Below are positions 3,877 through 55,482 of a stretch of DNA of 64,000 bases, piece after piece. Positions within the stretch are counted from its first letter, which is position 1. Every line of letters starts with the position of its first letter. The notes under the pieces are model-generated. The model did no database searches. It was not told the DNA's origin and was given only the letters and a program-made list of their open reading frames with translations. The position numbers were made by a program, and so were the translations under genes. The stretch spans positions 186,001-250,000 of the IMG/VR virus record IMGVR_UViG_3300023174_000038; one strand, given 5' to 3'.

Positions 3877-5016
3877 ATGACTCATTTTAATCCTCATTCA
3901 AATGATTGGTTAAAAAATAAATTTGATATATATAAAGAACTTAGAGCTAGAGATAAAGCATACTGGAGTGAAACCTATCAATTATATGTTATTACTAGAT
4001 ATGCCGATGTAAAATATGCGCTAAGTGAACATGATATCTTCTCATCTGCTAAGGGAAACTTAATAGTAGAAATGCCCTTTAGATTTGGCAGAACGTTAGG
4101 TGCTAGTGACAACCCATCACATGATGTATTTAAAAATATAGTAAAAAATGCGTATAGTAAGGATAATATAAATCGTATAGTAGATTTATTTTCTATTAAG
4201 GCAATAGAGTTACTTGAGAATAAACAATCGTTTAATGTTTCTACCGTTATAGAAGAACTAAGTGCTTGGGTAACTGCAGAAATATTAAACCTACCTTATG
4301 ATAAAGAACAGGTTAAAAATATCATTTTAGGTATACAGCGTCATAGTCCAGGATGTGTTTCAGTTAATGTAGATAGAACGTATTTAAATATATTTACTAA
4401 GTTACTTGATGACTTAACATCTAGAAAAGTAAAACCCACTGGTCCGGGTATATATAAAGAATTTATGACTAATCATCCAGATGTACAACCGGTAATGTCT
4501 TTGTTTCATGGACCAACTATATCCGGAGCTAGTTCACTTACCGGAGCATTAGAATTTTTAACATTAGATGTAGTTAGAGAAAATCAATTAGATATATTAT
4601 TAGAAGATAGGAATAATATTCCCAGCGTAATAGAAGAATCATTAAGATTTCATGCATCAACTGGTAGATTTTCTAGAACAGTAACTAAAGATGTAACACT
4701 ACATGGGATTGACCTTAAACCAGGTGATAGAGTTGCGTTATGTTTAGAATCTGCAAATAGAGACCCTGAAAAATTCATAGACCCTGAGAAATTCATTCTT
4801 AATAGAAGTACAGTTGGTCAATTAGCATTTGGTCATGGATTACATGCTTGTATAGCATTAGCTATTAGTAAATCAATAATGACTAAATATTTAGATATAT
4901 TATTAGATGTTGTTGGCAAATACAAAATAACAACATCTAATTCTGAATTAGAATATGTAATGACTGCATCCGGCAATGATGATATGATATCTAATATATG
5001 TATAGAAAAAATATAA
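3877..5016 (+). CDS. Cytochrome P450
   Basis: EESLR (ExxR), SANRDPEKF, heme motif FGHGLHACIA. Confidence 0.93.
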   Translation: MTHFNPHSNDWLKNKFDIYKELRARDKAYWSETYQLYVITRYADVKYALSEHDIFSSAKGNLIVEMPFRFGRTLGASDNPSHDVFKNIVKNAYSKDNINRIVDLFSIKAIELLENKQSFNVSTVIEELSAWVTAEILNLPYDKEQVKNIILGIQRHSPGCVSVNVDRTYLNIFTKLLDDLTSRKVKPTGPGIYKEFMTNHPDVQPVMSLFHGPTISGASSLTGALEFLTLDVVRENQLDILLEDRNNIPSVIEESLRFHASTGRFSRTVTKDVTLHGIDLKPGDRVALCLESANRDPEKFIDPEKFILNRSTVGQLAFGHGLHACIALAISKSIMTKYLDILLDVVGKYKITTSNSELEYVMTASGNDDMISNICIEKI

Positions 5017-6392: not shown

Positions 6393-6433
6393 AACCCCTG
6401 GGAAACTAAAAAGTCTCAGGGGTTTTTGCTTTT
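6393..6433 (+). terminator. Intrinsic terminator / attenuator hairpin
   Basis: AACCCCTGGGA...TCTCAGGGGTT stem followed by TTTGCTTTT. Confidence 0.8.
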
Positions 6434-6445
6434 ACAGAGAGGAAT

Positions 6446-6474
6446 TTGACAAGAAATGGATAAACAGATAGAAT
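6446..6474 (+). promoter_or_regulatory. Sigma70-type promoter
   Basis: TTGACA-17 nt-TAGAAT. Confidence 0.65.
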
Positions 6475-6623
6475 ACAAAACTTCTGAAAACAAACGTGAT
6501 TGGTTTAGCAATCATGTTTTGACTAAGGAACAAGTAGCACAGTTGATAGAGAATAAACTTCAACGTGCTAAAGTCTATCAAGAGGCTATTGAGAAAGTTA
6601 AAAAACTAACTTATACCAATTGA
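6456..6623 (+). CDS. Small hypothetical protein (55 aa)
   Basis: MDKQIEYKTSENKRDWFSNHVLTKEQVAQLIENKLQRAKVYQEAIEKVKKLTYTN*; GAGG upstream. Confidence 0.55.
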   Translation: MDKQIEYKTSENKRDWFSNHVLTKEQVAQLIENKLQRAKVYQEAIEKVKKLTYTN

Positions 6624-6624
6624 T

Positions 6625-6750
6625 AGATAGCGTGAATAGGCAACGAGAGCCGTAATACAGCGCAAAATGTATAGAATGGGCGGACTGAGGCATAAAATCT
6701 GTGGCGGTAACACAGAAAGTCAGAATCAGGCGGAGGTAACGATCTCCGCA
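6625..6750 (+). ncRNA. Candidate structured ncRNA A
   Basis: GC-enriched non-coding stretch; hairpins TCTGTG/CACAGA and GCGGAG/CTCCGC. Confidence 0.45.
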
Positions 6751-6759
6751 GAAAAGGAT

Positions 6760-7374
6760 TTAGTTCCTTTTCTTATATAAATCTCTTTCATTATTGTAAC
6801 GATTGAATTTACGACCTTTAATCCAACCCTGGTCATAATAGTGAGGATAAAGCGCATATGGAATACATTGACTCTTGCTCAAATCAAAGTTTGAAACCCA
6901 GATAGTATTTCCTTTAGCATTTCCTTTCCTTTCTTTTGTCCAACTAAGGCGTTGTCCATGTGAACTGGCCGCTAGGTATTTTTCACGATAAACGGCATCA
7001 TTTAACATTCTATCTCGGTGCTTTAATCCTGCAATCTTAGCAGCCTTGGTTTGCTGTCCCGGTTGATGTCCTTGATTAGGTAATGTGTTTATATAAGAAA
7101 AGGAACCGTGGCCCCCTTCTACTATATTATAAGTAGTGTCTAAACTAACGAAATCCGCGTTTACGACCTGTTTTTCTCTAAATAACATTGATTCTTTGTC
7201 ATTGAAGTGTTCAATGATTTCTTTGACAAAATTCTCTTTACCATATTTTTTGATTGCACGATGAAGATTCAGACCGGATCCAAAGTACCCATCATTTAAG
7301 TCGGAAGTTTGATGAACACCTATATAGATTTTATTATTTAATGTATTGGTGATTTTGTATAGATAATAGAACAT
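6760..7374 (-). CDS. GIY-YIG homing endonuclease (Seg-like)
   Basis: YLYKITN...KIYIG, YFGSG, AIKKYGKENF, YNIVEGG. Confidence 0.88.
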   Translation of the reverse strand: MFYYLYKITNTLNNKIYIGVHQTSDLNDGYFGSGLNLHRAIKKYGKENFVKEIIEHFNDKESMLFREKQVVNADFVSLDTTYNIVEGGHGSFSYINTLPNQGHQPGQQTKAAKIAGLKHRDRMLNDAVYREKYLAASSHGQRLSWTKERKGNAKGNTIWVSNFDLSKSQCIPYALYPHYYDQGWIKGRKFNRYNNERDLYKKRN

Positions 7375-7428
7375 ATTGTATTTATACGGACAGTAAGATG
7401 AAACTATATTAATATACTAACCCTATCA

Positions 7429-7529
7429 TGTCGTGTAGTGATACACGGCATTCTAAAACATACATCGTGGAAAATAAGGCCAAGAGGGCAACCCTGTTGA
7501 TTAGGGTGTACTATGTGTGTTTTAGAATG
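7429..7529 (+). ncRNA. Candidate structured ncRNA B (long closing stem)
   Basis: Hairpin TGTCGTGTA/TACACGGCA then 17-bp stem CATTCTAAAACATACAT/ATGTGTGTTTTAGAATG ending at the tRNA-Arg start. Confidence 0.55.
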
Positions 7530-7605
7530 CGACCGTAACTCAGTGGATTAGAGTACCTGTCTACGAAATAGGGAGTCGGAGGTTCAAGTCCTTCCGGTCG
7601 CACCA
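7529..7605 (+). tRNA. tRNA-Arg(ACG)
   Basis: Cloverleaf, anticodon arm CCTGT-CT ACG AA-ATAGG, encoded CCA. Confidence 0.95.
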
Positions 7606-7611
7606 ATATAT

Positions 7612-7687
7612 GGGACCATAGCTCAGTCGGTAGAGCAGTGGACTTTTAATCCATTGGTCGGGCGTTCGAACCGCCCTGGTCCCACCA
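7612..7687 (+). tRNA. tRNA-Lys(TTT)
   Basis: GTGGA-CT TTT AA-TCCAT, CCA. Confidence 0.95.
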
Positions 7688-7693
7688 TAATAT

Positions 7694-7783
7694 GGAAACG
7701 TGGCAGAGTTTGGTTTATTGCAACAGTCTTGAAAACTGTCGGTCCGAAAGGGCCCGTGAGTTCAAATCTCACCGTTTCTACCA
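7694..7783 (+). tRNA. tRNA-Ser(TGA)
   Basis: ACAGT-CT TGA AA-ACTGT, long variable arm, CCA. Confidence 0.95.
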
Positions 7784-7784
7784 T

Positions 7785-7861
7785 GGTGCTTGTCGTCAAG
7801 CGGTTAAGACCTCGGATTGTGATTCCGATATGCGTGGGTTCAAATCCCATCAAGCACCCCA
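7785..7861 (+). tRNA. tRNA-His(GTG)
   Basis: TCGGA-TT GTG AT-TCCGA, G-1:C73, CCA. Confidence 0.95.
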
Positions 7862-7862
7862 T

Positions 7863-7937
7863 GGATGTATAGCACAGCGGTAGTGCAATTCCTTCATACG
7901 GAATAGGTCAGTAGTTCAAATCTACTTACATCCACCA
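7863..7937 (+). tRNA. tRNA-Met(CAT), probably elongator
   Basis: ATTCC-TT CAT AC-GGAAT, CCA. Confidence 0.85.
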
Positions 7938-7942
7938 AACAT

Positions 7943-8016
7943 GCCCGGTTAGTTAAAAAGTATAACACACCCCTGATAAGGGTGAATCAGAGGAGCATTA
8001 CCTCTACTGGGTACCA
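7943..8016 (+). tRNA. tRNA-Ile(GAT), atypical D and T loops
   Basis: CACCC-CT GAT AA-GGGTG; acceptor GCCCGGT/ACTGGGT-A-CCA; T loop AGCATTA. Confidence 0.8.
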
Positions 8017-8023
8017 AATTTAC

Positions 8024-8097
8024 TGGGGGTTAGTTAAATGGTATAACATCGGATTTTGATTCCGAGATCACAAGTTCAATTCTTGTACCCTCTGCCA
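8024..8097 (+). tRNA. tRNA-Gln(TTG)
   Basis: TCGGA-TT TTG AT-TCCGA, CCA. Confidence 0.92.
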
Positions 8098-8179
8098 GTT
8101 ACGGAATATAATAAAGCCAAATTGATTGACAATCTGATATTAATCCTATTATAATGTTAAAAATTATATAGAAAGGTAT

Positions 8180-8503
8180 GTGATGGCAGGCAGATACATC
8201 GTTAGAAAATTTAAAAACGGAGTTAAGCATTTTTGGGATACTGATACAGGCAGTTGTATACACTGGTCTAAAGTCCAAGAGCGTATACCTAAAAAAGAAT
8301 TTGACAAATTATTTGAACAATTCAACAATAAACAACCAAAAAAAGAAAATGTTACTGAGCCACTTCCAAAACTATCTGAAATTTTGAGTGAAGTAATTAA
8401 CTTATATTCTGAAAAAATTTCAATAGAAGAAATAGTTGGAGCATTGGAGTTGTGCAAGACCCGTGCGTTAACAATGCATAAAATAAAAAAAATAAATCAA
8501 TGA
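8180..8503 (+). CDS. Hypothetical protein
   Basis: ORF after TTGACA-18-TATAAT (8126-8155) with AAGG SD. Confidence 0.65.
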   Translation: MMAGRYIVRKFKNGVKHFWDTDTGSCIHWSKVQERIPKKEFDKLFEQFNNKQPKKENVTEPLPKLSEILSEVINLYSEKISIEEIVGALELCKTRALTMHKIKKINQ

Positions 8504-8664
8504 GAGTGCCAGTTATGGGATAGACGATAGATTTGAGTCCCTGTCAATCTAGTCACAGTGGGGTTAACTGTGATGACACTATAGTATGATTTACGGGTGT
8601 ATAAACTTGCCTATACGAGACAATCTAACGAGGCTTACTAACAATAAGATAGTTAGGCTCCCTC
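8502..8664 (+). ncRNA. Candidate structured ncRNA C
   Basis: Hairpins TAGATT/AATCTA, TCACAGT/ACTGTGA, GTATA/TATAC, CTAAC/GTTAG; partial end pairing. Confidence 0.5.
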
Positions 8665-8671
8665 TTTTATC

Positions 8672-8746
8672 GGGTCCTTAGTTCAATGGATAGAATACGA
8701 TGCTTCGAACTTCGGGATGTGGGTTCAATTCCTGCAGGACCCGCCA
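8672..8746 (+). tRNA. tRNA-Arg(TCG)
   Basis: CGATG-CT TCG AA-CTTCG, acceptor GGGTCCT/AGGACCC-G-CCA. Confidence 0.88.
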
Positions 8747-8793
8747 TATGGCATTAAATACATATAGTGATAATAACAGAAAAGGAGTACTAC

Positions 8794-9354
8794 ATGGCTG
8801 TTCTAGCACTAGATATCTCGGGAGTTCCCCGGCAATGGATATCAAATGATGACGCAATTACCTATAAAGCAAAAGATGCCATAGCATGGTCAATGGGTAA
8901 TATTGTGGCTAAATATCGTGGTGGCATACAAAATGACGGTACATTAAGTTACTTAGAAGCTAATAGCATTATTGCTATCAAAGGTCATGGATTCAATCCA
9001 TACAAACACTCATGTGTTGCATTAACTAATAAAACATTGTTTGGTCGTGATAGACATGTATGTGCTTATTGCGGTGAACAGTTTCCAAACTATCATCTAT
9101 TAAGTCGTGACCACATTGTTCCACGTAGCAAAGGTGGTGAAAACACTTGGATGAATGTTGTTACCAGTTGTAAAACTTGTAACAGCAAAAAAGGACATAA
9201 GAGTTTAAAAGAAGTACGTATGGAATTACTATATGCACCTTATGTCCCAAACCACTACGAAAATATGATATTACAACATAGAACAATACTTGCTGACCAA
9301 ATGGAATATTTGTTAGCAGGTGTTCCAAAACATAGTAGAATATTATTAAGTTAG
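8794..9354 (+). CDS. HNH endonuclease family protein
   Basis: RDRHVCAYCG, SRDHIVPRSKGG, NVVTSCKTCNSKK; AAGGAG SD before ATG 8794. Confidence 0.9.
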   Translation: MAVLALDISGVPRQWISNDDAITYKAKDAIAWSMGNIVAKYRGGIQNDGTLSYLEANSIIAIKGHGFNPYKHSCVALTNKTLFGRDRHVCAYCGEQFPNYHLLSRDHIVPRSKGGENTWMNVVTSCKTCNSKKGHKSLKEVRMELLYAPYVPNHYENMILQHRTILADQMEYLLAGVPKHSRILLS

Positions 9355-9379
9355 TGTATAATACTATTAAATAAAATAC

Positions 9380-9454
9380 TCCCTTATAGCTCAGTGGTAG
9401 AGCAGCGCCCTTGTAAGGCGAAGGTCCCGTGTTCAAGTCATGGTGGGGGAACCA
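9380..9454 (+). tRNA. tRNA-Thr(TGT)
   Basis: CGCC-CT TGT AA-GGCG, CCA. Confidence 0.93.
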
Positions 9455-9461
9455 AATATAT

Positions 9462-9537
9462 TCTCTTGTAGCTCAGTCGGTAGAGCGTTTGACTGTTAAT
9501 CAAAATGTCCCTGGTTCGAGCCCAGGCAAGGGAGCCA
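9462..9537 (+). tRNA. tRNA-Asn(GTT)
   Basis: TTTGA-CT GTT AA-TCAAA, CCA. Confidence 0.95.
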
Positions 9538-9542
9538 AATTT

Positions 9543-10241
9543 ATGCATAAGATAAAAATATTCAGTCATATCATTGATACCCCAGATAGTTTAATGATTT
9601 TTAATAATCAATTCTCTTTACTTAAAGAAACTGGGTTACTAGACGTGGCATACAAAATATATCTATGCGTTAACGGAGAAGTATCTAAATTTGATACAAT
9701 ACAAGAATTAGCGAATCAATATCATAATGTAGAAATGATTCATACCAATACTAGTATTGAACATTATGAATATCCCACATTAAATTTTCTTAAAGAAAAT
9801 ATTGATAACGATACTGATTCTTATATTTTGTATTTTCATGTTAAAGGTGCTAGTAAAAACGAATCCAAAGATATACGTAATTGGCGTTTTCTATTAGAAT
9901 ACTATAATATCATAAAATATCAAACCTGTATAGATTATCTTAACAAGGGATATGATACAGTTGGTATACTATATAGAGAGGGTTTTCATAGTCAATGGCT
10001 ACACTATAGTGGAAACTTTTGGTGGGCTAATTCTAATCATATTAAGCGTTTACCTAAATTACCTCACCCATCTGATACATTAGGTGGCGGGAATAGTAAA
10101 ATTAGTATGTTGCCGTATATGAATGAAAACTTTAGATATGACCATGAAGCTTGGATAGGTTGTGTCAAACCCTGGAATTATATATCGTTGTTCCAAGATG
10201 ATATAGAAGAAGAAACACGTAGGATAATGAAATTATGTTAG
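9543..10241 (+). CDS. Hypothetical protein, possibly glycosyltransferase-like
   Basis: YEYPTL, LYFHVKG, HYSGNFWWA motifs; start moved past the tRNAs. Confidence 0.6.
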   Translation: MHKIKIFSHIIDTPDSLMIFNNQFSLLKETGLLDVAYKIYLCVNGEVSKFDTIQELANQYHNVEMIHTNTSIEHYEYPTLNFLKENIDNDTDSYILYFHVKGASKNESKDIRNWRFLLEYYNIIKYQTCIDYLNKGYDTVGILYREGFHSQWLHYSGNFWWANSNHIKRLPKLPHPSDTLGGGNSKISMLPYMNENFRYDHEAWIGCVKPWNYISLFQDDIEEETRRIMKLC

Positions 10242-10951
10242 TATCAGTAGACCCTTTTTATCATGTAACCATTGACAATTTTTTTGAGGAATCTTTAGCA
10301 GAAAAACTATCTAATGAATTTATTGATTATAATGATGAACGTTGGTTTTATTACAATAATGTTATTGAAAATAAAAAAACATTAAACGATTGGAGATTTT
10401 TACCCAAACATATATATCAAGCATTCACTCAGTTTTGCTCAGATGAATTTGTTAAAAAACTACAAGATATGACTGGTATAGAAAAATTGTATCCTGATTA
10501 TGGATTGCATGGTGGCGGCTGTCATATGCATGGTAGAAACGGTAAACTTAATATACATAGAGATTATTCTATACACCCTAAATTAGGATTAGAACGAAAG
10601 TTAAATCTTATTATATATCTATCTAAAGATTGGGATACGTCATGGGGAGGTGGATTAGAATTATGGTCACACGATGATGAAAACAATCAACCAAAAGAAA
10701 AAGTAAAAGAAGTAGAATGTGTTTTTAATCGTGCTGTACTTTTTGATACGACACAAGATTCTTGGCATGGTTTACCTGAACCCTTACGTTGTCCTGCAGG
10801 TGTCTATAGAAAAAGTTTAGCTATGTATTATATGACTAACCCTAGCCTAGAGGTTGACCCAAGACAACGGGCATTATTTGCACCCACAGAAAATCAGAAA
10901 AATGATATTGAAGTAAAAAACTTCATAGAAGAAAGAACAAAGCTTTCTTAA
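10235..10951 (+). CDS. 2OG-Fe(II) oxygenase
   Basis: HRD...LIIYL..WGGGLELW..FNRAVLF..SWHG..RKS. Confidence 0.88.
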   Translation: MLVSVDPFYHVTIDNFFEESLAEKLSNEFIDYNDERWFYYNNVIENKKTLNDWRFLPKHIYQAFTQFCSDEFVKKLQDMTGIEKLYPDYGLHGGGCHMHGRNGKLNIHRDYSIHPKLGLERKLNLIIYLSKDWDTSWGGGLELWSHDDENNQPKEKVKEVECVFNRAVLFDTTQDSWHGLPEPLRCPAGVYRKSLAMYYMTNPSLEVDPRQRALFAPTENQKNDIEVKNFIEERTKLS

Positions 10952-10954
10952 TAG

Positions 10955-11029
10955 CTGGCGTTAGTATAATGGATAATACAATCGGCTTCTACCCGATGAA
11001 TGTGGGTTCGATTCCTGCACGCCGGACCA
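10955..11029 (+). tRNA. tRNA-Arg(TCT)
   Basis: ATCGG-CT TCT AC-CCGAT, CCA. Confidence 0.92.
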
Positions 11030-11083
11030 AATAATATACGTATTTTATAGGTTAGAGATAAATACTCTAACCGAGGAGAGAGT

Positions 11084-11425
11084 ATGTGGAAATGTAAAAC
11101 ATGTGAAAAAGAAGGACAGGAACATTTTTATAAAAGCCAAGCTTGGTATTGTAAAAGTTGTTGGAATGTTCGTACGGCACACCGATCTAAAAACAATGTA
11201 AAAATTCTTAAAGAAGAATACGGTGGAAAATGCACCAAGTGTGGTTACAATAAATGCATGGATGCACTACAGTTTCACCATGTTGATCCTACTAAAAAGG
11301 AATTTTCATTAGGGTTAGCAAGACAAAAAAATTTAGATAAACTTAGAAAAGAGATGGACAAGTGTATTTTGGTTTGTAGTAATTGTCATATTGAAATTCA
11401 CCATGACATACATAAAAATAAATAA
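11084..11425 (+). CDS. HNH endonuclease with Zn-binding Cys pairs
   Basis: CxxC pairs, LQFHHVDP, CILVCSNCH. Confidence 0.85.
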   Translation: MWKCKTCEKEGQEHFYKSQAWYCKSCWNVRTAHRSKNNVKILKEEYGGKCTKCGYNKCMDALQFHHVDPTKKEFSLGLARQKNLDKLRKEMDKCILVCSNCHIEIHHDIHKNK

Positions 11426-11427
11426 AA

Positions 11428-11456
11428 TAGAGGTTCGATTCCTCTACGCCGGACCA
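11428..11456 (+). repeat. Duplicated 3' end (T arm and acceptor strand) of tRNA-Arg(TCT)
   Basis: AGAGGTTCGATTCCTCTACGCCGGACCA vs GTGGGTTCGATTCCTGCACGCCGGACCA at 11002-11029. Confidence 0.9.
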
Positions 11457-12035
11457 TTATTGAATTAGAAGTTGCCAATCTTCATTGCTATAGTGATAAT
11501 CTTCCAACACTTCTAGCATTCTTGCAAAGACAATTAATCCTCTTTTGTGATTAATTAATTCTATTTGATGTAATTTTATCTTCTTTTCAGCAAAAGTTTT
11601 TAATAAATTCTCACCCTCTTTTTTCAACTTAATTTTTTTTGAAACAATATTCAATTTGGCTATTAGATTGTTACATTCTACGATGGCAACAGAGGTTTGT
11701 TGTTGTAATGCACGTATTTCTATTTTCATTTTTAGTATTAAGTCATCAAATTCTGGGTTAATGTGTGGTAGAAATTGTGTTATCATAACAGACAGTCTAC
11801 CAAAGACTTCAGTATTAAGATTGAAGTCATCATAGTGATCACCTGTTGAATCATAGTGTTCACGTTTAGTTGGATCACTTAACACTTCATATGCTAATTT
11901 CATTCGCTTAAACTTTTCTACATCTCCTCCCTTGTCAGGATGATATAATTGTGCCAAGATTCTGTATTTTTGTTTGATTTCTTCAGACGTACAGGTTTTT
12001 GGTAATTCTAAATCATCGTATAGGGAGGTTGTCAT
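11457..12035 (-). CDS. DnaJ-domain protein
   Basis: LYDDLEL...YHPDKGG...AYEVLSDPTKREHYD. Confidence 0.88.
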   Translation of the reverse strand: MTTSLYDDLELPKTCTSEEIKQKYRILAQLYHPDKGGDVEKFKRMKLAYEVLSDPTKREHYDSTGDHYDDFNLNTEVFGRLSVMITQFLPHINPEFDDLILKMKIEIRALQQQTSVAIVECNNLIAKLNIVSKKIKLKKEGENLLKTFAEKKIKLHQIELINHKRGLIVFARMLEVLEDYHYSNEDWQLLIQ

Positions 12036-12088
12036 AACAATATTTATCATGAAATATTGCATGTAGTATTAAGTACTATGTTTAAAAT

Positions 12089-12198
12089 TTGACAATAAAT
12101 CCTCAATCTGCTATACTCTAGTTATAGATTGATTGAACAAGTTTTTGGGAAACAGTGAAACAAAAGAATTTGACAATAAATGGTAGTTATGATACAAT
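12089..12198 (+). promoter_or_regulatory. Two tandem sigma70-type promoters
   Basis: TTGACAATAAAT...TATACT and TTGACAATAAAT...TACAAT, 17-nt spacers. Confidence 0.75.
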
Positions 12199-12286
12199 CA
12201 TAGCATGAGTTGAGAAAGTCATCGTACTAATCAACAAGGTTCTTTAAAATTCTGAGTTATCATATAGCCCTGTTTAAGTTACAGGG

Positions 12287-12501
12287 ACTATATGAAAATA
12301 CATTAAGGTCACCTAATCCGTTAGGCAGGTCTATGGGGTCAGCCGGTGGACGACGCCGGGTCGCATAGGGTGCAAGAAGCGTATCGACAATAGCAATATT
12401 GTTTAACGTGACGGGCAGTTAGGCAGTAATGACAGAAACAACGATCCAGTAGACGGTACTGGTGGATACAGTTTACGTTCCTTAATGTGTTTTCATATAG
12501 T
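12287..12501 (+). ncRNA. Candidate structured ncRNA D (22-bp closing stem)
   Basis: ACTATATGAAAATACATTAAGG/CCTTAATGTGTTTTCATATAGT enclosing a GC-rich multibranch core. Confidence 0.65.
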
Positions 12502-12502
12502 G

Positions 12503-12629
12503 TGTTATTAGTTTTGCTGACGTAAGCGCCTGAGTAAACGTCAACTCTAACTAACTATGTATAGAAACGGTAAACTTGCAAATAATTCCGTTGAGCATAG
12601 CAAATAGTGCGTCAGCAAAACTAATAACA
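12503..12629 (+). ncRNA. Candidate structured ncRNA E (22-bp closing stem)
   Basis: TGTTATTAGTTTTGCTGACGTA/TGCGTCAGCAAAACTAATAACA, ends 1 nt before tRNA-Glu. Confidence 0.65.
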
Positions 12630-12630
12630 T

Positions 12631-12705
12631 GGAGCATTCGTCTATCGGTTAGGACATTAGGTTTTCATCCTAAGAAGAGGAGTTCGATTCTCCTATGCTC
12701 TTCCA
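12631..12705 (+). tRNA. tRNA-Glu(TTC)
   Basis: TTAGG-TT TTC AT-CCTAA, CCA. Confidence 0.93.
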
Positions 12706-12708
12706 AAG

Positions 12709-12905
12709 AATCCCGTTACTACTTTCGTTAAAGTAGCGTTTGAATAGCGATAGAGTTCCGGTGGCAGAAAACCGTTAGCGTGAGGATTAAAAATACCCTC
12801 GCAGGCTCTGATAGGCAGAATCTCAACTGCACACAGACTTTGAATAAATGGAGATGGACAGAGTAACTGCTCAATTAAGGGCTTGTGTGGAAACAAGTAG
12901 CTTAT
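12709..12905 (+). ncRNA. Candidate structured ncRNA F
   Basis: Hairpins CTACTTT/AAAGTAG, CGGT/ACCG, GCGTGAGG/CCTCGC, GAG-TAACTG-CTC, CTTGT/ACAAG. Confidence 0.5.
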
Positions 12906-12915
12906 ACTAATTTTT

Positions 12916-12978
12916 TGAGTTACATCGCCTTGATACTTCTCTCAGTAATGAGACACTAGGTCTTGCAACCGTAACTCA
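12916..12978 (+). ncRNA. Small tRNA-sized structured element G
   Basis: TGAGTTAC/GTAACTCA closing stem; inner TCTCA-GTAA-TGAGA. Confidence 0.4.
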
Positions 12979-12982
12979 TCTT

Positions 12983-13068
12983 GGAGATGTAGGAAAATTG
13001 GTAACCCCAGGAGACTGTAAATCTTCCGCCTTATGGCACTACTGGTTCAACTCCAGTCGTCTCCACCA
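12983..13068 (+). tRNA. tRNA-Tyr(GTA)
   Basis: GGAGA-CT GTA AA-TCTTC, variable arm, CCA. Confidence 0.93.
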
Positions 13069-13135
13069 AGAATATAGGAGGGTCGCTGGGCAGGCGTACT
13101 CTTAAACGACCTAGGCCAAAGGGGTGTCCTATTCT
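13069..13135 (+). ncRNA. Small structured element H
   Basis: ATAGGA/TCCTAT outer stem, GGGTCG/CGACCT inner stem. Confidence 0.4.
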
Positions 13136-13141
13136 GTGTTA

Positions 13142-13216
13142 GGTCTCAAAGTGTTCACGGACGCATACATGCCTGTCACGCATGAGGAGCGGGATCGTTA
13201 CCCGCTGGGACCGCCA
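13142..13216 (+). tRNA. tRNA-Asp(GTC), atypical T loop
   Basis: CATGC-CT GTC AC-GCATG; T loop ATCGTTA; GCCA end. Confidence 0.88.
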
Positions 13217-13262
13217 AAATATTTGACAACAATCATTGTATGATATATAGATAACAAGTTTT

Positions 13263-13347
13263 GCGAGTGTGGTGGAATCGGAATACACACAAGACTTAAA
13301 ATCTTGCGCCGCAAGGATTGAGGGTTCAAGTCCCTCCACTCGCACCA
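13263..13347 (+). tRNA. tRNA-Leu(TAA)
   Basis: CAAGA-CT TAA AA-TCTTG, variable arm, CCA. Confidence 0.95.
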
Positions 13348-13356
13348 AAGAATGAT

Positions 13357-13433
13357 GCCTCTATAGCGCAATTGGTTAGCGCAGCGGACTCATAATCCGT
13401 TGGTTCCTGGTTCGAGTCCAGGTGGAGGCACCA
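13357..13433 (+). tRNA. tRNA(CAT), probably Ile2 (lysidine type)
   Basis: GCGGA-CT CAT AA-TCCGT; context resembles proteobacterial tRNA-Ile2. Confidence 0.8.
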
Positions 13434-13441
13434 GTTAAGCA

Positions 13442-13533
13442 GGAGACGTGGCCGAGTGGCCGAAGGCAGCAGGTTGCTAACCTGTCGTATGTAGTAATAT
13501 GTACCGTGAGTTCGAATCTCACCGTCTCCACCA
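13442..13533 (+). tRNA. tRNA-Ser(GCT)
   Basis: GCAGG-TT GCT AA-CCTGT, long variable arm, CCA. Confidence 0.95.
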
Positions 13534-13534
13534 A

Positions 13535-13717
13535 TTAGCGATGGTTTGTTTTGTTTATGATTTGATGTAAGATGTTAGGATCATCACTCATCATCCTAGC
13601 TAGTAAACCAGTAAGATAACCCCGTTCATATAATAATTGTTCGTGGCTATCTTTGTAATTACGTTTGTTTTGACGCAACAACTTTTCAACAACATCAATA
13701 CAGTTTTGTAGTTCCAT
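13535..13717 (-). CDS. Small hypothetical protein (MELQNC...)
   Basis: TAAATA 4 nt upstream of ATG 13717. Confidence 0.6.
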   Translation of the reverse strand: MELQNCIDVVEKLLRQNKRNYKDSHEQLLYERGYLTGLLARMMSDDPNILHQIINKTNHR

Positions 13718-13732
13718 ACTGTATTTATAAAA

Positions 13733-13930
13733 GAACGTTCCGGGTGTCTCCGGATAGTGTGACCCACACGATGAGAAGTAGTGTGACAACTACGGGTGGT
13801 AGTCTTTAAACCGAAAGGCCGCTAGCAATGCGAGAACGGTCCCTGTCGGGAAGCGGGTGGAAGGAGTGTGTGATGGGTATGATAGCGTCATATCTTGATA
13901 CTCTATAATTACCGCCGGGGGATGCAGAGC
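13733..13930 (+). ncRNA. Candidate structured ncRNA I
   Basis: GC-rich; hairpins TCCGG/CCGGA, GTGTG/CACAC, GTAGT/ACTAC, TATGA/TCATA; TCCCT/GGGGA. Confidence 0.55.
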
Positions 13931-13936
13931 ATATAT

Positions 13937-14014
13937 GCAACGGTGGCAGAGTGGTCCAATGCAACGGATTGCAAATCCGTAAAACCGTCAGTTCAAATCT
14001 GACCCGTTGCTCCA
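13937..14014 (+). tRNA. tRNA-Cys(GCA)
   Basis: ACGGA-TT GCA AA-TCCGT, U73-CCA. Confidence 0.93.
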
Positions 14015-14019
14015 AACAA

Positions 14020-14184
14020 TTATAGTGCTTGTATAAAAGCAAGTGCTGTTTCAATATTATTGAAGAATTTCATAGTCAATTTGAAATTGTCAACATCAAA
14101 TACCATAATGTAAAATGTATGTTCAGCACTCATTGATAAGTGTATAACAAGTCCTGTTTTCGTGATAGCGTCATATATGTACAT
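14020..14184 (-). CDS. Small hypothetical protein (MYIYDAITK...)
   Basis: TAAATA 5 nt upstream of ATG 14184; longer ORF overlaps tRNA-Gly. Confidence 0.55.
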   Translation of the reverse strand: MYIYDAITKTGLVIHLSMSAEHTFYIMVFDVDNFKLTMKFFNNIETALAFIQAL

Positions 14185-14196
14185 AAATATATTTAT

Positions 14197-14270
14197 GCGG
14201 GGTTCGTATAGTGGTAATACCTCAGCCTTCCAAGCTGATGCGGAGAGTTCGATTCTCTTACCCCGCTCCA
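14197..14270 (+). tRNA. tRNA-Gly(TCC)
   Basis: TCAGC-CT TCC AA-GCTGA, U73-CCA. Confidence 0.95.
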
Positions 14271-14286
14271 TTATTATAAATATCAT

Positions 14287-14817
14287 ATGAAATTACTATT
14301 TGTGCCATTAGATATAAAAGTCACTGATATCAACTTTGATTTAGGTGAAAAACAAAACTATCACATAAATCATTGGGAAACATTTGATGTTATTGGGAAA
14401 GAAAATAATTATCAAAACTATAACAGTTTATTAAATCAACTTCCAATAACGGATATCACTATCTTTACACATAAGATTCAAAAAACTAAAATTGGACCTC
14501 ATTATGATTATCATGGTTTGCATGATGAATTATATAAACATTTCAAAGAAAATGAGCCAGCCGGCTATCATGTAGTTTTAAAAGGTAAAGGTGACTCATT
14601 AGAAATTTTTAACGGCAAAGAATGGATTAACCCTATATTACCTAAAGTGCCTATAGCATACTTACTAAATTTAACTTCTTGCATACATAGAGTAAAAGAA
14701 GATAATTCAAGAGAAACACTGTATATACAAGGTTGGTTAGATATTAAAAAACATAATCAATTAATAGAACGCAGTTTAAAACAATATGGCAATCTAGCAG
14801 TATATAGCCAAGCTTAA
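14287..14817 (+). CDS. Hypothetical protein, possible double-stranded beta-helix oxygenase
   Basis: PHYD...IHRV...R pattern; TATAAATA upstream. Confidence 0.5.
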   Translation: MKLLFVPLDIKVTDINFDLGEKQNYHINHWETFDVIGKENNYQNYNSLLNQLPITDITIFTHKIQKTKIGPHYDYHGLHDELYKHFKENEPAGYHVVLKGKGDSLEIFNGKEWINPILPKVPIAYLLNLTSCIHRVKEDNSRETLYIQGWLDIKKHNQLIERSLKQYGNLAVYSQA

Positions 14818-15093
14818 TTATTTACCAATTCTATTTAAAATGTTCATTGCTCTGGTTCTTAACCGTTCAGTAAATTCTGATTCAGTTAATGCTCCTTTAG
14901 CAAGATTACATTTTCTACAAGTTACTTGAAGATTATTATACGTGGTTTCTCCACCTTTACTTTCAGCAATCACATGATCTATGTGTATTTCTTTATCGGA
15001 TAAGTCTTCATCACAATAGACACACCATTTTCCGTCCCTTTCAATAACTCTACGACGTAGGTTAAGAGGGATGTATTGTTTCTTTTGTAGCAT
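14818..15093 (-). CDS. HNH endonuclease
   Basis: RDGKWCVYC, HIDHVIAESKGG, NLQVTCRKCNLAK. Confidence 0.9.
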   Translation of the reverse strand: MLQKKQYIPLNLRRRVIERDGKWCVYCDEDLSDKEIHIDHVIAESKGGETTYNNLQVTCRKCNLAKGALTESEFTERLRTRAMNILNRIGK

Positions 15094-15158
15094 AAATTTA
15101 TTTAGCTACCCAAATATAGTAGACAGATAAATAGTTTTCTGTTATTATGAATAATAAA

Positions 15159-15243
15159 GCGGACGTGGCGTAATTGGCAGCCGCACCAGATTTAGGTTCT
15201 GGCGTCGTAAGATGTGTGAGTTCGAGTCTCACCGTCCGCACCA
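15159..15243 (+). tRNA. tRNA-Leu(TAG)
   Basis: CCAGA-TT TAG GT-TCTGG, CCA. Confidence 0.95.
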
Positions 15244-15247
15244 AACA

Positions 15248-15321
15248 GGGGGATTGATGTAATGGGAGCCTGGGACCTTTGCAAGGTCTTCGTAACAGTT
15301 CGATTCTGTTATCCTCCACCA
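15248..15321 (+). tRNA. tRNA-Ala(TGC)
   Basis: GGACC-TT TGC AA-GGTCT; G3:U70; CCA. Confidence 0.9.
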
Positions 15322-15327
15322 AGATAG

Positions 15328-15402
15328 CGCGGGGTAGAGAAGTAGTAACTCATCAGGCTCATAACCTGAAGATCGGCGGTGCGAATCCGTCCCCCGCATC
15401 CA
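15328..15402 (+). tRNA. Initiator tRNA-fMet(CAT)
   Basis: CGCGGGG/CCCCGCA with C1:A72 mismatch; TCAGG-CT CAT AA-CCTGA. Confidence 0.9.
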
Positions 15403-15406
15403 GTTA

Positions 15407-15483
15407 CGGAGTGTGGCGCAGTCTGGTAGCGCACCTGGTTTGGGACCAGGGGGTCCAAGGTTCGAATCCTTGTACTCCGACCA
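15407..15483 (+). tRNA. tRNA-Pro(TGG)
   Basis: CCTGG-TT TGG GA-CCAGG, CCA. Confidence 0.95.
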
Positions 15484-15505
15484 ATGTTTTTAAAAAGGAA
15501 ATAGT

Positions 15506-15670
15506 ATGACATGCAGAGGATATGATGCGAAAGCAGTGAAAGTTTCAAAGACAGTTAAACGTGCCGCGGCAAAAATTATGGACAACCATAAGCGTGGTGA
15601 CTTTATTCGTAGTTATGTAGAGATTGAAAGAAGTAATTCACGTACAGGTTCTCGTAAGGATAGCAAATGA
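15506..15670 (+). CDS. Small basic hypothetical protein (MTCRGYDAK...)
   Basis: 54-aa ORF with AAGGA SD. Confidence 0.55.
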   Translation: MTCRGYDAKAVKVSKTVKRAAAKIMDNHKRGDFIRSYVEIERSNSRTGSRKDSK

Positions 15671-15846
15671 GTAAAGGTAGCTTGCCAAGACCTTATAGTG
15701 TTGATTTGAAAACTTTCAACAATAATTGGGATAATATCTTTCGCAAGCCTGATCCAAGAATTATTGAGGATCAAAAGAATGAAGATGAAGCATTTGAACA
15801 AATTGCTAGTCAATCAGAAGTTAAAGATAGTACCCAAGGTGGTTAA
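15667..15846 (+). CDS. Small hypothetical protein (MSKGSLPRP...)
   Basis: 59-aa ORF coupled by ATGA overlap. Confidence 0.55.
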   Translation: MSKGSLPRPYSVDLKTFNNNWDNIFRKPDPRIIEDQKNEDEAFEQIASQSEVKDSTQGG

Positions 15847-15855
15847 ATAGAATGT

Positions 15856-15930
15856 GGATCGTTAACTCAGTGGTAGAGTAGCGCCTTTACACGGCGAATG
15901 TCGGGAGTTCGACCCTCTCACGATCCACCA
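15856..15930 (+). tRNA. tRNA-Val(TAC)
   Basis: CGCC-TT TAC AC-GGCG, CCA. Confidence 0.93.
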
Positions 15931-15945
15931 AACAAAGGAGTAATT

Positions 15946-16086
15946 ATGAGCAAAAGTGAAGATGTAATTAATAGAGCATACGGACACATTGTCAAAGAAG
16001 TTACTCCGGTACTTATTTTTGATATTACTATATTTCGTGGTTTTAAATACTATTGGTACAAATTACTTAGAAAAGTAACAAGATAA
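15946..16086 (+). CDS. Small hypothetical protein
   Basis: AAGGAG SD then ATG 15946. Confidence 0.5.
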   Translation: MSKSEDVINRAYGHIVKEVTPVLIFDITIFRGFKYYWYKLLRKVTR

Positions 16087-16090
16087 AATT

Positions 16091-16627
16091 ATGGCACATC
16101 CGCAACAATTTAATTATATACAAAAACTTAAACTATTATATCCAACTCATTTCTTTAATAGCAAAGTACTTGAAGTGGGTAGTCTTAACATTAATGGTTC
16201 AATACGAATCTTTTTTAGTCATTGTGATTATTTAGGAATTGATGTTGGTCCGGGTAATGATGTTGACTTAGTATGTGAAGGTCAAACGTTAGATCATCCA
16301 GACAATACATATGATACAGTTGGTAGCTGTGAATGTTTTGAACATAATCCTTATTGGGTAGAAACATTCGTTAACATGCATCGTATGGCTAAACCAAATG
16401 GACTAGTGTTTATGACATGTGCTACTACTGGTAGACCAGAACACGGTACTACTCGTACTACACCACAAGATAGTCCTCTTACTACAGGTATAGGGTGGGA
16501 CTATTATAGAAATTTAACTGAAGAAGATTTCAGAAAAGAATTAGACATAGATAATATGTTTAGTACATATAAATTTGAAGTGGGTTCACCCCATGCAGAT
16601 TTGTATTTTTATGGTATTAAAAAATAA
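16091..16627 (+). CDS. Class I SAM-dependent methyltransferase
   Basis: VLEVGS, YLGIDVGPG, CFEHNP. Confidence 0.8.
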   Translation: MAHPQQFNYIQKLKLLYPTHFFNSKVLEVGSLNINGSIRIFFSHCDYLGIDVGPGNDVDLVCEGQTLDHPDNTYDTVGSCECFEHNPYWVETFVNMHRMAKPNGLVFMTCATTGRPEHGTTRTTPQDSPLTTGIGWDYYRNLTEEDFRKELDIDNMFSTYKFEVGSPHADLYFYGIKK

Positions 16628-16635
16628 AGGTAAAT

Positions 16636-16857
16636 ATGTCACAAAGCAGAGCAAGATATTCAAGTGAAGAAGCCGCACTTATGGTCGGTAATCGTTTTGA
16701 TTTAGTTCTTATCGCTTCACAAAGAGTAAGAGAATTAAAGCGAGGACATCGTTCACTACTTACTACTAAAGCAGGACCAATGGTAACTGCATTAGAAGAA
16801 ATTGAACAAGGACTTGTTGGACGTGAATATCTTAAACGTATTAGAAAAAATTTGTAA
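16636..16857 (+). CDS. rpoZ: RNA polymerase omega subunit
   Basis: ARYSSEEA..VGNRFDLVLIASQRVREL..ALEEIEQG. Confidence 0.9.
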   Translation: MSQSRARYSSEEAALMVGNRFDLVLIASQRVRELKRGHRSLLTTKAGPMVTALEEIEQGLVGREYLKRIRKNL

Positions 16858-16861
16858 ATAT

Positions 16862-16935
16862 ATCTCCCTAATGTAATGGCAGCATACCGGTCTCCAAAAC
16901 CGTTAGTCAAGGTTCGAGTCCTTGGGGGGATGCCA
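16862..16935 (+). tRNA. tRNA-Trp(CCA)
   Basis: CGGT-CT CCA AA-ACCG, G73-CCA. Confidence 0.9.
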
Positions 16936-55413: not shown

Positions 55414-55482
55414 TGTTTTCTCCTTTGTAAAGCAAGATTTTTTCTCTATAGACCCGTTAGGCATCTATAGAAAAGTATTTAT
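55414..55482 (-). promoter_or_regulatory. TAAATA promoter and ROSE-like thermometer of dnaK
   Basis: CUAUAGAUGCC..GGGUCUAUAG hairpin then UCUUGCUU-UACA-AAGGAGA. Confidence 0.65.

What the first reader, a model, noticed from the sequence alone, without database searches (positions are those of the whole stretch)
7429..7529. Third long-stem RNA abutting tRNA-Arg(ACG)
Seen: a 17-bp stem CATTCTAAAACATACAT/ATGTGTGTTTTAGAATG whose last base is tRNA +1, enclosing AGGG-CAA-CCCT and preceded by a 9-bp hairpin. The stem resembles that of element D (AAAA..ACAT/ATGTGTTTT). Inference: a recurring architecture of an AU-rich long stem carrying a variable GC-rich cargo.
Basis: partly seen in the sequence, partly recalled or inferred. 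Interest (0 to 1): 0.6.

Follow-up and report, generated by a model that had tools for sequence, protein, structure and literature searches.

The report
Conserved leader-RNA stem heading phage tRNA array
The hairpin is real: it is the last domain of a previously undescribed, conserved structured leader RNA that heads the tRNA gene array of a group of uncultured T4-like giant phages, and in this genome a homing-endonuclease gene has split that leader; it probably acts as a cutting and insulating stem for tRNA maturation, which is untested.

Summary
Bases 7448-7465 pair with 7513-7530: 18 perfect pairs with one G.U, or 21 pairs with one mismatch. The stem overlaps tRNA-Arg(ACG) positions +1 and +2, and a 6-bp GNRA hairpin (7432-7447) precedes it. 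Fold z-score is -4.9.

It is not a free-standing RNA gene. Related IMG/VR phage contigs yield 37 further distinct versions. All lie at a fixed distance after a small conserved ORF, as the 3' domain of a multi-helix leader RNA at the head of the tRNA array.

- Pairing: 98% of cells pair, and 9 of 18 stem pairs show compensatory changes.
- Invariant core: a 6-bp block (AUUCUA/UAGAAU) never varies.
- Cargo: the apical insert is hypervariable, with about 17 classes of 13-94 nt, so it is dispensable.
- Junction: the stem abuts tRNA-Arg directly in 19 of 38 versions.

In this window a roughly 670-bp GIY-YIG endonuclease cassette (6750-7419) separates the leader's 5' half (6624-6749) from this 3' half.

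No Rfam family and no GenBank phage matches. The phage is T4-like and encodes no RNase III.

The most likely role (about 0.4) is a double-stranded processing stem cut by host RNase III, with RNase P cutting at tRNA +1. No expression data could be obtained.

The parts
6446..6474 (+). Sigma-70-type promoter-like site (TTGACA, 17 nt, TAGAAT) upstream of the leader. It overlaps the start of the small ORF. It is the only strong candidate promoter for the first seven tRNAs.
   Evidence: Read from the sequence and conserved in relatives. No comparably good + strand promoter lies between 6500 and 7528. Its function is inferred.
6456..6623 (+). Small conserved ORF (55 aa, core motif LTKEQ..LI..K..RA.VY) that always precedes the leader RNA.
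   Evidence: 62 related loci were found, and 47 of them carry the leader at a fixed distance downstream. No Pfam family matches.
6624..6749 (+). 5' half of the leader RNA. It holds the hairpin with the AACGAGA loop (6639-6651), the GGGCGGAC motif, helix P2 (6685-6688 with 6720-6723) enclosing the GCGGTAA-loop hairpin (6698-6716), and a GC hairpin (6730-6749) in the place of helix H0.
   Evidence: Alignment with relatives, sequence, and consensus folds with compensatory changes.
6750..7419 (-). Homing-endonuclease cassette inserted in the leader. The GIY-YIG (seg-like) gene is at 6760-7374 on the minus strand, with TATAAATA (T4 late-promoter type) at 7387-7380.
   Evidence: Pfam GIY-YIG and SegE_GIY-YIG. 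The cassette is absent from the L052, L073, L095, L111 and L126 contigs aligned across this site, and all 47 leaders found downstream of the small ORF sit at the uninterrupted distance. A related endonuclease sits in the leader of L132. TATAAATA is enriched before ORF starts.
7420..7427 (+). Orphan 3' strand of helix H0 (ACCCTATC). Its 5' partner was lost with the cassette insertion.
   Evidence: Alignments A1, A2 and A4.
7432..7447 (+). Helix H1: a 6-bp hairpin with a GNRA tetraloop (GTGA).
   Evidence: 4 of 6 pairs show changes on both sides across 38 sequences, and 100% of cells pair. The loop is GNRA in most members.
7448..7465 (+). Helix H2, 5' arm of the long stem.
   Evidence: Covariation.
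7466..7512 (+). Apical 'cargo' of H2 (47 nt): an inner stem extension, an internal loop and a terminal hairpin (7491-7496 with 7502-7507). This segment is hypervariable across the family.
7513..7530 (+). Helix H2, 3' arm. Its last two bases are tRNA-Arg positions +1 and +2.
7529..7605 (+). tRNA-Arg(ACG), the first gene of the 25-tRNA array, with CCA encoded.
   Evidence: ARAGORN and Rfam tRNA at 62.1 bits.

Best explanation
Identity (shown): 7420-7530 is the 3' domain of a conserved structured leader RNA. It consists of a GNRA hairpin (H1) followed directly by a long AU-rich helix (H2) with a free-to-vary tip. In a clade of uncultured T4-like jumbo phages this leader lies between a small ORF and the first tRNA of the array. 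In this genome a GIY-YIG homing-endonuclease cassette has split it.

Mechanism (inferred): H2 is a double-stranded processing and insulating stem.
1. The array is transcribed together with the upstream RNA. Here that probably means read-through from the promoter at 6446-6474, across the cassette in antisense.
2. Host RNase III cuts the 18-21-bp duplex and severs the tRNA block from the upstream RNA.
3. RNase P then cuts at tRNA-Arg +1, which lies at the foot of the stem.
4. The apical tip is released or discarded, which is why it can vary or nearly vanish.
5. The invariant 6-bp block AUUCUA/UAGAAU is the first part of the helix left after the RNase P cut. It is the likely recognition or end-protecting element.
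For: - The structure is real. Across 38 distinct sequences 98.2% of cells pair, 16 of 32 pairs change on both sides (9 of 18 in H2), and 0 of 500 shuffles or any slid register come close (for the MAFFT-based set of 20).
- The RNA strand is the + strand: U.G, U-A and C-G alternate at one pair with no C.A, and the loops are GNRA.
- Position is constant: one copy per genome, at the array head, after the small ORF.
- H2 abuts tRNA-Arg with no spacer in 19 of 38 versions.
- The cargo is dispensable (13-14 nt in L149 and L016) and falls into about 17 classes.
- In relatives, stems of the same kind enclose whole tRNAs (His, Lys-CUU) and end within -3 to +4 of the next tRNA, as rRNA processing stems do.
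- Helix length fits the roughly 20-22 bp of E. coli RNase III substrates (PMC3867540).
- The phage is T4-like (Gp23 capsid), and host RNase III takes part in T4 tRNA maturation (PMC4810235).
- The phage has no RNase III gene, so a host enzyme would act.
Against: - There are no expression or cleavage data.
- The host and its RNase III specificity are unknown.
- RNase III has little positive sequence specificity, so it does not by itself explain an invariant 6-bp block.
- The leader is a compact chain of contiguous helices with conserved loops, which looks more like a functional folded RNA than a mere cutting site.
- T4's own leader before tRNA-Gln has only an 11-bp hairpin, so the T4 parallel is loose.
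Confidence: 0.4

Rival explanations
1. H2 is the closing helix of a stable, trans-acting leader ncRNA, comparable to T4 species 1 and 2 RNAs or other tRNA-island RNAs of phages. RNase P cleavage at tRNA-Arg +1 makes its 3' end, and the long stem buries that end and protects it from exonucleases. RNase III does not cut it.
For: - It is a multi-helix conserved RNA with covarying helices and conserved loops (AACGAGR, GCGATAA, GNRA).
- The helices abut without linkers.
- The invariant block begins exactly at the first pair that survives an RNase P cut.
- 19 of 38 versions abut the tRNA directly.
- Apical hairpins of the cargo keep their pairing through compensatory changes (L013 against L039, L052 against L111, L151).
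- T4 tRNA clusters carry small stable RNAs of unknown function (PMC2330249).
- ROOL and GOLLD also lie near phage tRNA islands (PMC12286853).
Against: - The leader tolerates a roughly 670-bp cassette between its halves here, and a related one in L132.
- H3 and the cargo are optional.
- An uninterrupted 18-21-bp duplex would normally be an RNase III target.
- No abundance data exist.
Confidence: 0.3
2. It is a regulatory leader that controls transcription into the tRNA array, acting as an attenuator or processive antiterminator. H1 with its GNRA loop would be a protein-binding hairpin.
For: - It lies at the head of the operon.
- H1 is a boxB-like short GNRA hairpin.
- About a third of the versions carry a further hairpin (H3) followed by a T-run before the first tRNA.
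- H1 and H2 can exchange their boundary pairs.
Against: - H3 and its T-run are absent from the 19 of 38 versions that abut tRNA-Arg, this one included.
- No conserved, mutually exclusive terminator and antiterminator pairing was found.
- No boxA-like motif was found.
- The small upstream protein matches no known RNA-binding family.
Confidence: 0.1
3. The inverted repeat acts at the DNA level, either as a recombination module that shuffles cassettes (as PeSL motifs do in T4-type phages) or as the target of the neighbouring homing endonuclease.
For: - Identical H2 plus cargo is joined to different downstream modules (tRNA-Arg against H3: L170/L171, L183/L186, L175/L182), and the same downstream module is joined to unrelated cargos.
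- Endonuclease cassettes are inserted in the leader in two lineages.
- Similar stems recur in tandem in relatives.
- PeSL precedent: PMC2839356, PMC4122927.
Against: - Compensatory changes, G.U pairs and GNRA loops show selection on the RNA fold of the + strand.
- There is a single copy per genome.
- The element contains no promoter.
- Arm spacing varies from 13 to 94 nt.
- No cargo is inverted between genomes.
Confidence: 0.08
4. It is a chance or neutral palindrome in AT-rich intergenic DNA.
For: The genome is AT-rich (36% GC), and loose matches to the core motif are common.
Against: z = -4.9, 38 distinct conserved versions with covariation, and a fixed genomic position.
Confidence: 0.01

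Closest known systems
RNase III processing stems of stable-RNA operons (E. coli rRNA operon stems, the phage T4 tRNA precursor, T7 R1.1-type sites)
   Same: A quasi-continuous AU-rich duplex of 18-21 bp flanks stable RNAs in a polycistronic precursor. The apical part is free to vary. In relatives the same kind of stem encloses whole tRNAs. The phage is T4-like and would rely on the host enzyme.
   Different: Cleavage is untested. A 6-bp block of the stem is invariant, which RNase III alone does not require. The stem is embedded in a larger folded leader. T4's own leader hairpin is only 11 bp.
T4 small stable RNAs, species 1 and 2 (rnaC, rnaD), in the tRNA cluster
   Same: These are non-tRNA structured RNAs of unknown function, co-located and presumably co-transcribed with tRNAs in a T4-type phage, next to a GIY-YIG seg endonuclease (segB in T4).
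   Different: There is no sequence match. The T4 RNAs lie at the distal end of the cluster, not its head. Species 1 is tRNA-like with a T arm, and this element is not.
ROOL and GOLLD large ornate RNAs of phages
   Same: They are structured RNAs of unknown function, often encoded next to phage tRNA islands (PMC12286853).
   Different: No Rfam match at permissive thresholds. This RNA is far smaller (about 230-300 nt) and has a different architecture.
PeSL promoter/stem-loop cassettes of T4-type phages
   Same: They are conserved short stem-loop modules at junctions where unrelated segments are exchanged between related T4-type genomes.
   Different: PeSLs combine an early promoter with a terminator and recur many times per genome. 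This stem has no promoter, occurs once per genome and is under RNA-level selection.

Membership tests
Bacterial RNase III processing stem | Quasi-continuous double helix of about two turns (about 20-22 bp; many cellular substrates are somewhat shorter) | tested here: met
   18 perfect pairs, or 21 with one mismatch. Family members span 17-22 bp. Criterion taken from PMC3867540.
Bacterial RNase III processing stem | Staggered double-strand cleavage by RNase III in vivo or in vitro | not testable with these tools
Bacterial RNase III processing stem | No inhibitory G-C pairs at the proximal-box positions next to the cut | tested here: inconclusive
   The cut site is unknown. The helix is AU-rich (arms 33% GC), which is compatible but not diagnostic.
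Bacterial RNase III processing stem | Flanks or separates stable RNAs in a polycistronic precursor | tested here: met
   It directly abuts tRNA-Arg, the first of 25 tRNAs. It does so in 19 of 38 versions.
Rfam families, including GOLLD, ROOL, YrlA and group I introns | Match to the family covariance model | tested here: not met
   There is no non-tRNA hit at the element at E up to 1 in the window, or at E up to 5 in L007, L013 and L073.
Y RNA / YrlA | A Ro (TROVE) protein partner encoded in the genome | tested here: not met
   No TROVE domain in the 349-kb genome.
T4 species 1 and 2 RNAs | Sequence similarity to T4 rnaC or rnaD | tested here: not met
   blastn of the element and of a full relative leader against 50,697 phage records found only tRNA matches.
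T4 species 1 and 2 RNAs | Non-tRNA structured RNA inside the tRNA cluster of a T4-type phage | tested here: met
   Gp23 capsid at E = 5e-99; array context; T4 map.
PeSL cassette | Early promoter fused to the stem-loop, present in many copies per genome | tested here: not met
   No strong promoter lies in 7419-7530. There is one copy per genome.
Intrinsic terminator | G+C-rich stem followed at once by a U-run | tested here: not met
   The stem is AU-rich and is followed by the tRNA. No + strand terminator was called.
MITE-like mobile inverted repeat | Multiple dispersed copies with terminal inverted repeats | tested here: not met
   A single model hit in the own genome and in a complete 352-kb relative. 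A 20-mer scan of 185,579 prokaryote genomes gave one chance hit with no model match.

The most novel reading that the evidence does not exclude
The leader is a new class of phage structured RNA whose long stem is cut by RNase III to release the hypervariable apical hairpin as a small RNA. That would be a bacterial analogue of a primary microRNA-type precursor. The many cargo classes would then reflect an arms race with hosts, for example decoys for tRNA-targeting defence nucleases or host-directed small RNAs.
Probability: 0.12. Interest if true: 0.8.

Novelty: new variant of a known kind. Interest (0 to 1): 0.5.

Why it matters
Large tRNA arrays are a hallmark of jumbo phages, but how their long precursors are organised and matured is little studied outside T4.

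This work defines a conserved leader RNA supported by covariation, with 38 distinct versions. It is absent from Rfam and from GenBank phages. It has an invariant duplex core and a hypervariable tip, and it belongs to a wider habit in these phages of wrapping spacers, and even whole tRNAs, in long stems.

That gives a concrete and testable model for RNase III/RNase P-coupled maturation of phage tRNA arrays. It also shows a homing endonuclease invading an RNA gene without destroying its 3' domain, and offers a candidate new structured RNA family for structural and functional study.

Tried and rejected
- Rfam scans of the window array and of three relatives found only tRNAs and sub-threshold noise.
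- megablast and blastn of the element, and of a complete relative leader, against 50,697 GenBank phage records found nothing except tRNA-Asn.
- No RNase III domain (PF14622, PF00636) and no TROVE/Ro domain is present in the genome.
- The first 14-mer scan of viral contigs returned mostly chance hits and had to be filtered by requiring the 3' arm.
- The loose core-motif scan of the genome is uninformative because the genome is AT-rich.
- The family covariance model does not detect the other two long stems in the window, so the three could not be unified.
- I looked for cargo in inverted orientation between genomes, as an invertible switch would show. Only trivial palindromic 9-mers were shared.
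- A 20-mer scan of prokaryote genomes gave one hit in a MAG contig with no model match and no tRNAs. I take it as chance, so it gives no clue to the host.
- I first read the upstream similarity (CGGACAGTA...) as the end of homology. Alignment with relatives showed that the real 5' half lies upstream of the endonuclease gene.
- The -10-like TATAGAAT before GGGCGG is not conserved across relatives, so I rejected it as a promoter.
- The small ORF matches no Pfam family.

Full report
**1. Setting**

The window is bases 186001-250000 of a 348,701-bp IMG/VR virus record with 36% GC. All 25 tRNA genes of the genome lie on the + strand at window 7529-16935. The phage has a T4-type major capsid protein (Pfam Gp23, E = 5e-99). 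TATAAATA, the T4 late-promoter motif, is followed by an ORF start within 40 nt in 15 of its 28 copies, against 3-9 of 52-56 for scrambled controls. I therefore treat the phage as a T4-like jumbo phage. Its host is unknown.

**2. The observation**

The sequence shows a 5' arm at 7448-7465 and a 3' arm at 7513-7530. These form 18 contiguous pairs with one U.G, and the helix extends to 21 pairs with one mismatch. tRNA-Arg(ACG) starts at 7529, so the last two bases of the stem are tRNA +1 and +2.

- The fold has z = -4.94, and 0 of 200 shuffles fold as well.
- With the tRNA attached, stem and cloverleaf coexist and z = -4.45.
- Of the eight longest stems (21 bp or more) in the whole genome, three lie in the tRNA array: this one and two abutting ones at 12285-12503 and 12501-12631. 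The latter pair folds with z = -7.98.
- No ORF of 40 aa or more covers 7375-7528.

**3. Relatives show what it belongs to**

I reached related IMG/VR contigs in three ways: through the neighbouring P450 gene, through a DNA pattern, and through the small ORF upstream. They carry the same stem.

A covariance model built on 20 sequences found a strong + strand match in 47 of 62 loci. The match always starts about 85-125 nt after the end of the small ORF. With earlier finds this gives 38 distinct sequences. The model finds one copy in the window's own genome and one strong copy in a complete 352-kb relative.

The element is the 3' end of a longer conserved non-coding stretch of about 230-300 nt. 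That stretch lies between the small ORF and the first tRNA, whichever tRNA that is: Arg, Asn, Gln or others. Consensus folding gives a chain of helices:
- a hairpin with loop AACGAGR;
- the motif GGGCGGAC;
- helix P2, enclosing a hairpin with loop GCGATAA;
- H0, 8 bp;
- H1, 6 bp with a GNRA loop;
- H2, the long stem;
- in some members H3 (an inner CCCUCUGACGGG-type hairpin) followed by a T-run.

H1, H2 and H3 follow one another without linkers.

**4. Covariation**

On the MAFFT alignment of 20 sequences, 97.8% of cells pair and 7 pairs change on both sides. On 38 distinct sequences the figures are as follows (this alignment is fitted to the model, which favours the structure somewhat):
- 98.2% of cells pair.
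- 16 of 32 pairs change on both sides: 3 of 8 in H0, 4 of 6 in H1 and 9 of 18 in H2.
- No shuffle out of 500, and no slid register, comes close.

Examples in H2 are A-U to G-C (L159), C-G to U-A (L157) and A-U to U-A (L162, L180, L192). One pair alternates between U.G (20), U-A (11) and C-G (7) and is never C.A. Together with the GNRA loops, this places the selected fold on the + strand RNA.

Six consecutive pairs (AUUCUA/UAGAAU) and one further A-U never vary. In the more distant L010, L012 and L132 lineage the homologous position holds a long stem of different sequence.

**5. The cargo**

The apical insert falls into about 17 classes at 70% identity, with lengths of 13-94 nt. In L149 and L016 it is only 13-14 nt, so it is not essential.

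Within classes the small apical hairpins keep their pairing through compensatory changes: L013 against L039, L052 against L111, and L151. So the cargo is structured when it is present. Mean cargo GC is 0.43, against 0.33 for the arms.

The same H2 plus cargo is joined to different downstream modules: tRNA-Arg against H3 in L170/L171 and L183/L186, and tRNA-Arg against a third downstream context in L182/L175. The 3' foot of H2 is therefore a module junction. A hairpin with a YUGAC loop sits either in H3 or inside the cargo; the window class belongs to the second group. No cargo is inverted between genomes.

In 19 of 38 versions, including the window, H2 abuts tRNA-Arg(ACG) with no spacer.

**6. 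What is special in this window**

Compared with L052, L073, L095, L111 and L126, homology runs from window 6127 to about 6685-6724 and resumes at 7419-7420. Between these points lies a cassette with a GIY-YIG, SegE-like gene at 6760-7374 on the minus strand.

- The 5' half of the leader is at 6624-6749. Helix P2 is kept there through compensatory changes (CUGA/UCAG in place of CAGU/ACUG).
- The 3' half (H1 + H2) is at 7420-7530.
- The 5' strand of H0 is lost.
- A related endonuclease (53% identity) also sits inside the leader of L132, with TATAAATA, a Shine-Dalgarno sequence and ATG upstream of it.

This mirrors segB in the T4 tRNA cluster (PMC2330249).

No strong sigma-70-type promoter lies on the + strand between the cassette and tRNA-Arg. 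The first seven tRNAs therefore probably depend on read-through from TTGACA-17-TAGAAT at 6446-6474. This is an inference.

**7. Mechanism**

*Shown.* This is a conserved, folded RNA domain at the head of the array. The stem is the constant part, the tip is optional, and the foot coincides with the RNase P site of tRNA-Arg in half of the family.

*Inferred.* An uninterrupted 18-21-bp duplex in a bacterial transcript is the expected substrate of RNase III, whose idealised substrate is 22 bp with degenerate sequence needs (PMC3867540). Host RNase III takes part in T4 tRNA maturation (PMC4810235). The phage has no RNase III gene of its own. In relatives, stems of the same kind enclose whole tRNAs (His, Lys-CUU) and end within -3 to +4 of the next tRNA, as rRNA processing stems do.

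My preferred reading, at about 0.4, is that H2 is cut by host RNase III, which frees the tRNA block from the upstream RNA, and that RNase P then trims at +1.

The main rival, at about 0.3, is that H2 is left intact. It would then close and protect the 3' end, made by RNase P, of a stable leader ncRNA. This would better explain the invariant block and the compact multi-helix fold.

Regulatory (0.1) and DNA-level (0.08) readings are less well supported, for the reasons given under rival explanations.

**8. Comparison with known families**

- No Rfam family matches.
- No GenBank phage record matches.
- No Ro partner is encoded.
- The T4 leader before tRNA-Gln has only an 11-bp hairpin, and T4 species 1 RNA is tRNA-like with a T arm.
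- PeSL cassettes (PMC2839356, PMC4122927) share the role of module junction, but they have a promoter and many copies per genome.
- ROOL and GOLLD share the tRNA-island neighbourhood (PMC12286853) but neither sequence nor size.

I therefore file the element as a new variant of a known kind: a processing or leader stem of a stable-RNA operon, within a new RNA family.

**9. Limits**

- There are no transcript data.
- The host is unknown.
- The promoter assignment is inferred.
- The 38-sequence alignment is model-fitted.
- The relationship to the other two long stems in the window rests only on a short shared core.

Noticed in passing
genome 38319-38707, minus strand (outside the window): ARAGORN calls a permuted (two-piece type) tmRNA gene with tag peptide ANDSQFALAA in this phage genome.
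   Followed up: no
window 6750-7419: A GIY-YIG seg-like homing-endonuclease cassette is inserted in the leader RNA gene in the opposite orientation, with a T4-type late promoter motif TATAAATA at 7387-7380. Only 4 nt separate that motif from the called ATG, whereas L132 has a normal Shine-Dalgarno spacer. Relatives of this endonuclease all lie in phage tRNA arrays.
   Followed up: partly
window 12257-12631: Two abutting long-stem RNAs precede tRNA-Glu. The first is 12285-12503, a 23-bp stem with a 171-nt partly conserved GC-rich cargo; it has homologs in L007, L052, L068 and L078. The second is 12501-12631, a 24-bp stem ending at tRNA-Glu +1; it is present only here and in L052. Joint fold z = -7.98. 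Two strong promoters lie at 12089 and 12170.
   Followed up: partly
window 12706-12982: This 277-nt non-coding spacer between tRNA-Glu and tRNA-Tyr is 95-98% identical to L052, which is more conserved than the neighbouring genes. It has no significant fold (z = -0.97) and no Rfam hit.
   Followed up: partly
L007 16114-16214; L006 20167-20262; L010 5997-6094 and 5003-5144: In relatives, tRNA-His and tRNA-Lys(CUU) are wrapped in 14-22-bp leader/trailer stems that also pair the encoded CCA end. The 3' arm runs into, or up to, the next tRNA.
   Followed up: partly
L006 18064-18356; L068 4123-4617; L078 7050-7564: Tandem series of hairpins share one basal stem (ACCAUAUAAAAACAC... type, starting in the CCA end of tRNA-Lys(UUU)) but carry different apical inserts.
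   Followed up: no
L052 about 875-966: tRNA-Arg(ACG) next to the leader appears interrupted just after the anticodon loop by unrelated sequence. This may be an intron or an insertion.
   Followed up: no
L010 4150-4250; L012 5650-5745; L132 2190-2280 (minus strand): A tRNA-like element (acceptor-like stem, T arm GGTTCGATTCC, ending CCACCA) follows the leader, and ARAGORN does not call it. In L132 the long-stem cargo itself holds a T arm, GGGGTTCGAATCCCC.
   Followed up: no
window 3877-5016, 10235-10951, 11457-12062, 53518-55464: The phage encodes a cytochrome P450, a 2OG-Fe(II) oxygenase, a DnaJ-domain protein and a full DnaK (about 66% identical to DnaK-annotated sequences in Pseudomonas, Salmonella and Acinetobacter records of the phage collection). 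An HNH endonuclease lies at 8767-9354, inside the array.
   Followed up: partly
window 6394-6428: A terminator-like hairpin with a T-run lies only 8 nt before the Shine-Dalgarno sequence of the small ORF. How the ORF and the leader are transcribed is therefore unclear. The perfect promoter-like site at 6446-6474 overlaps the ORF's start codon.
   Followed up: no
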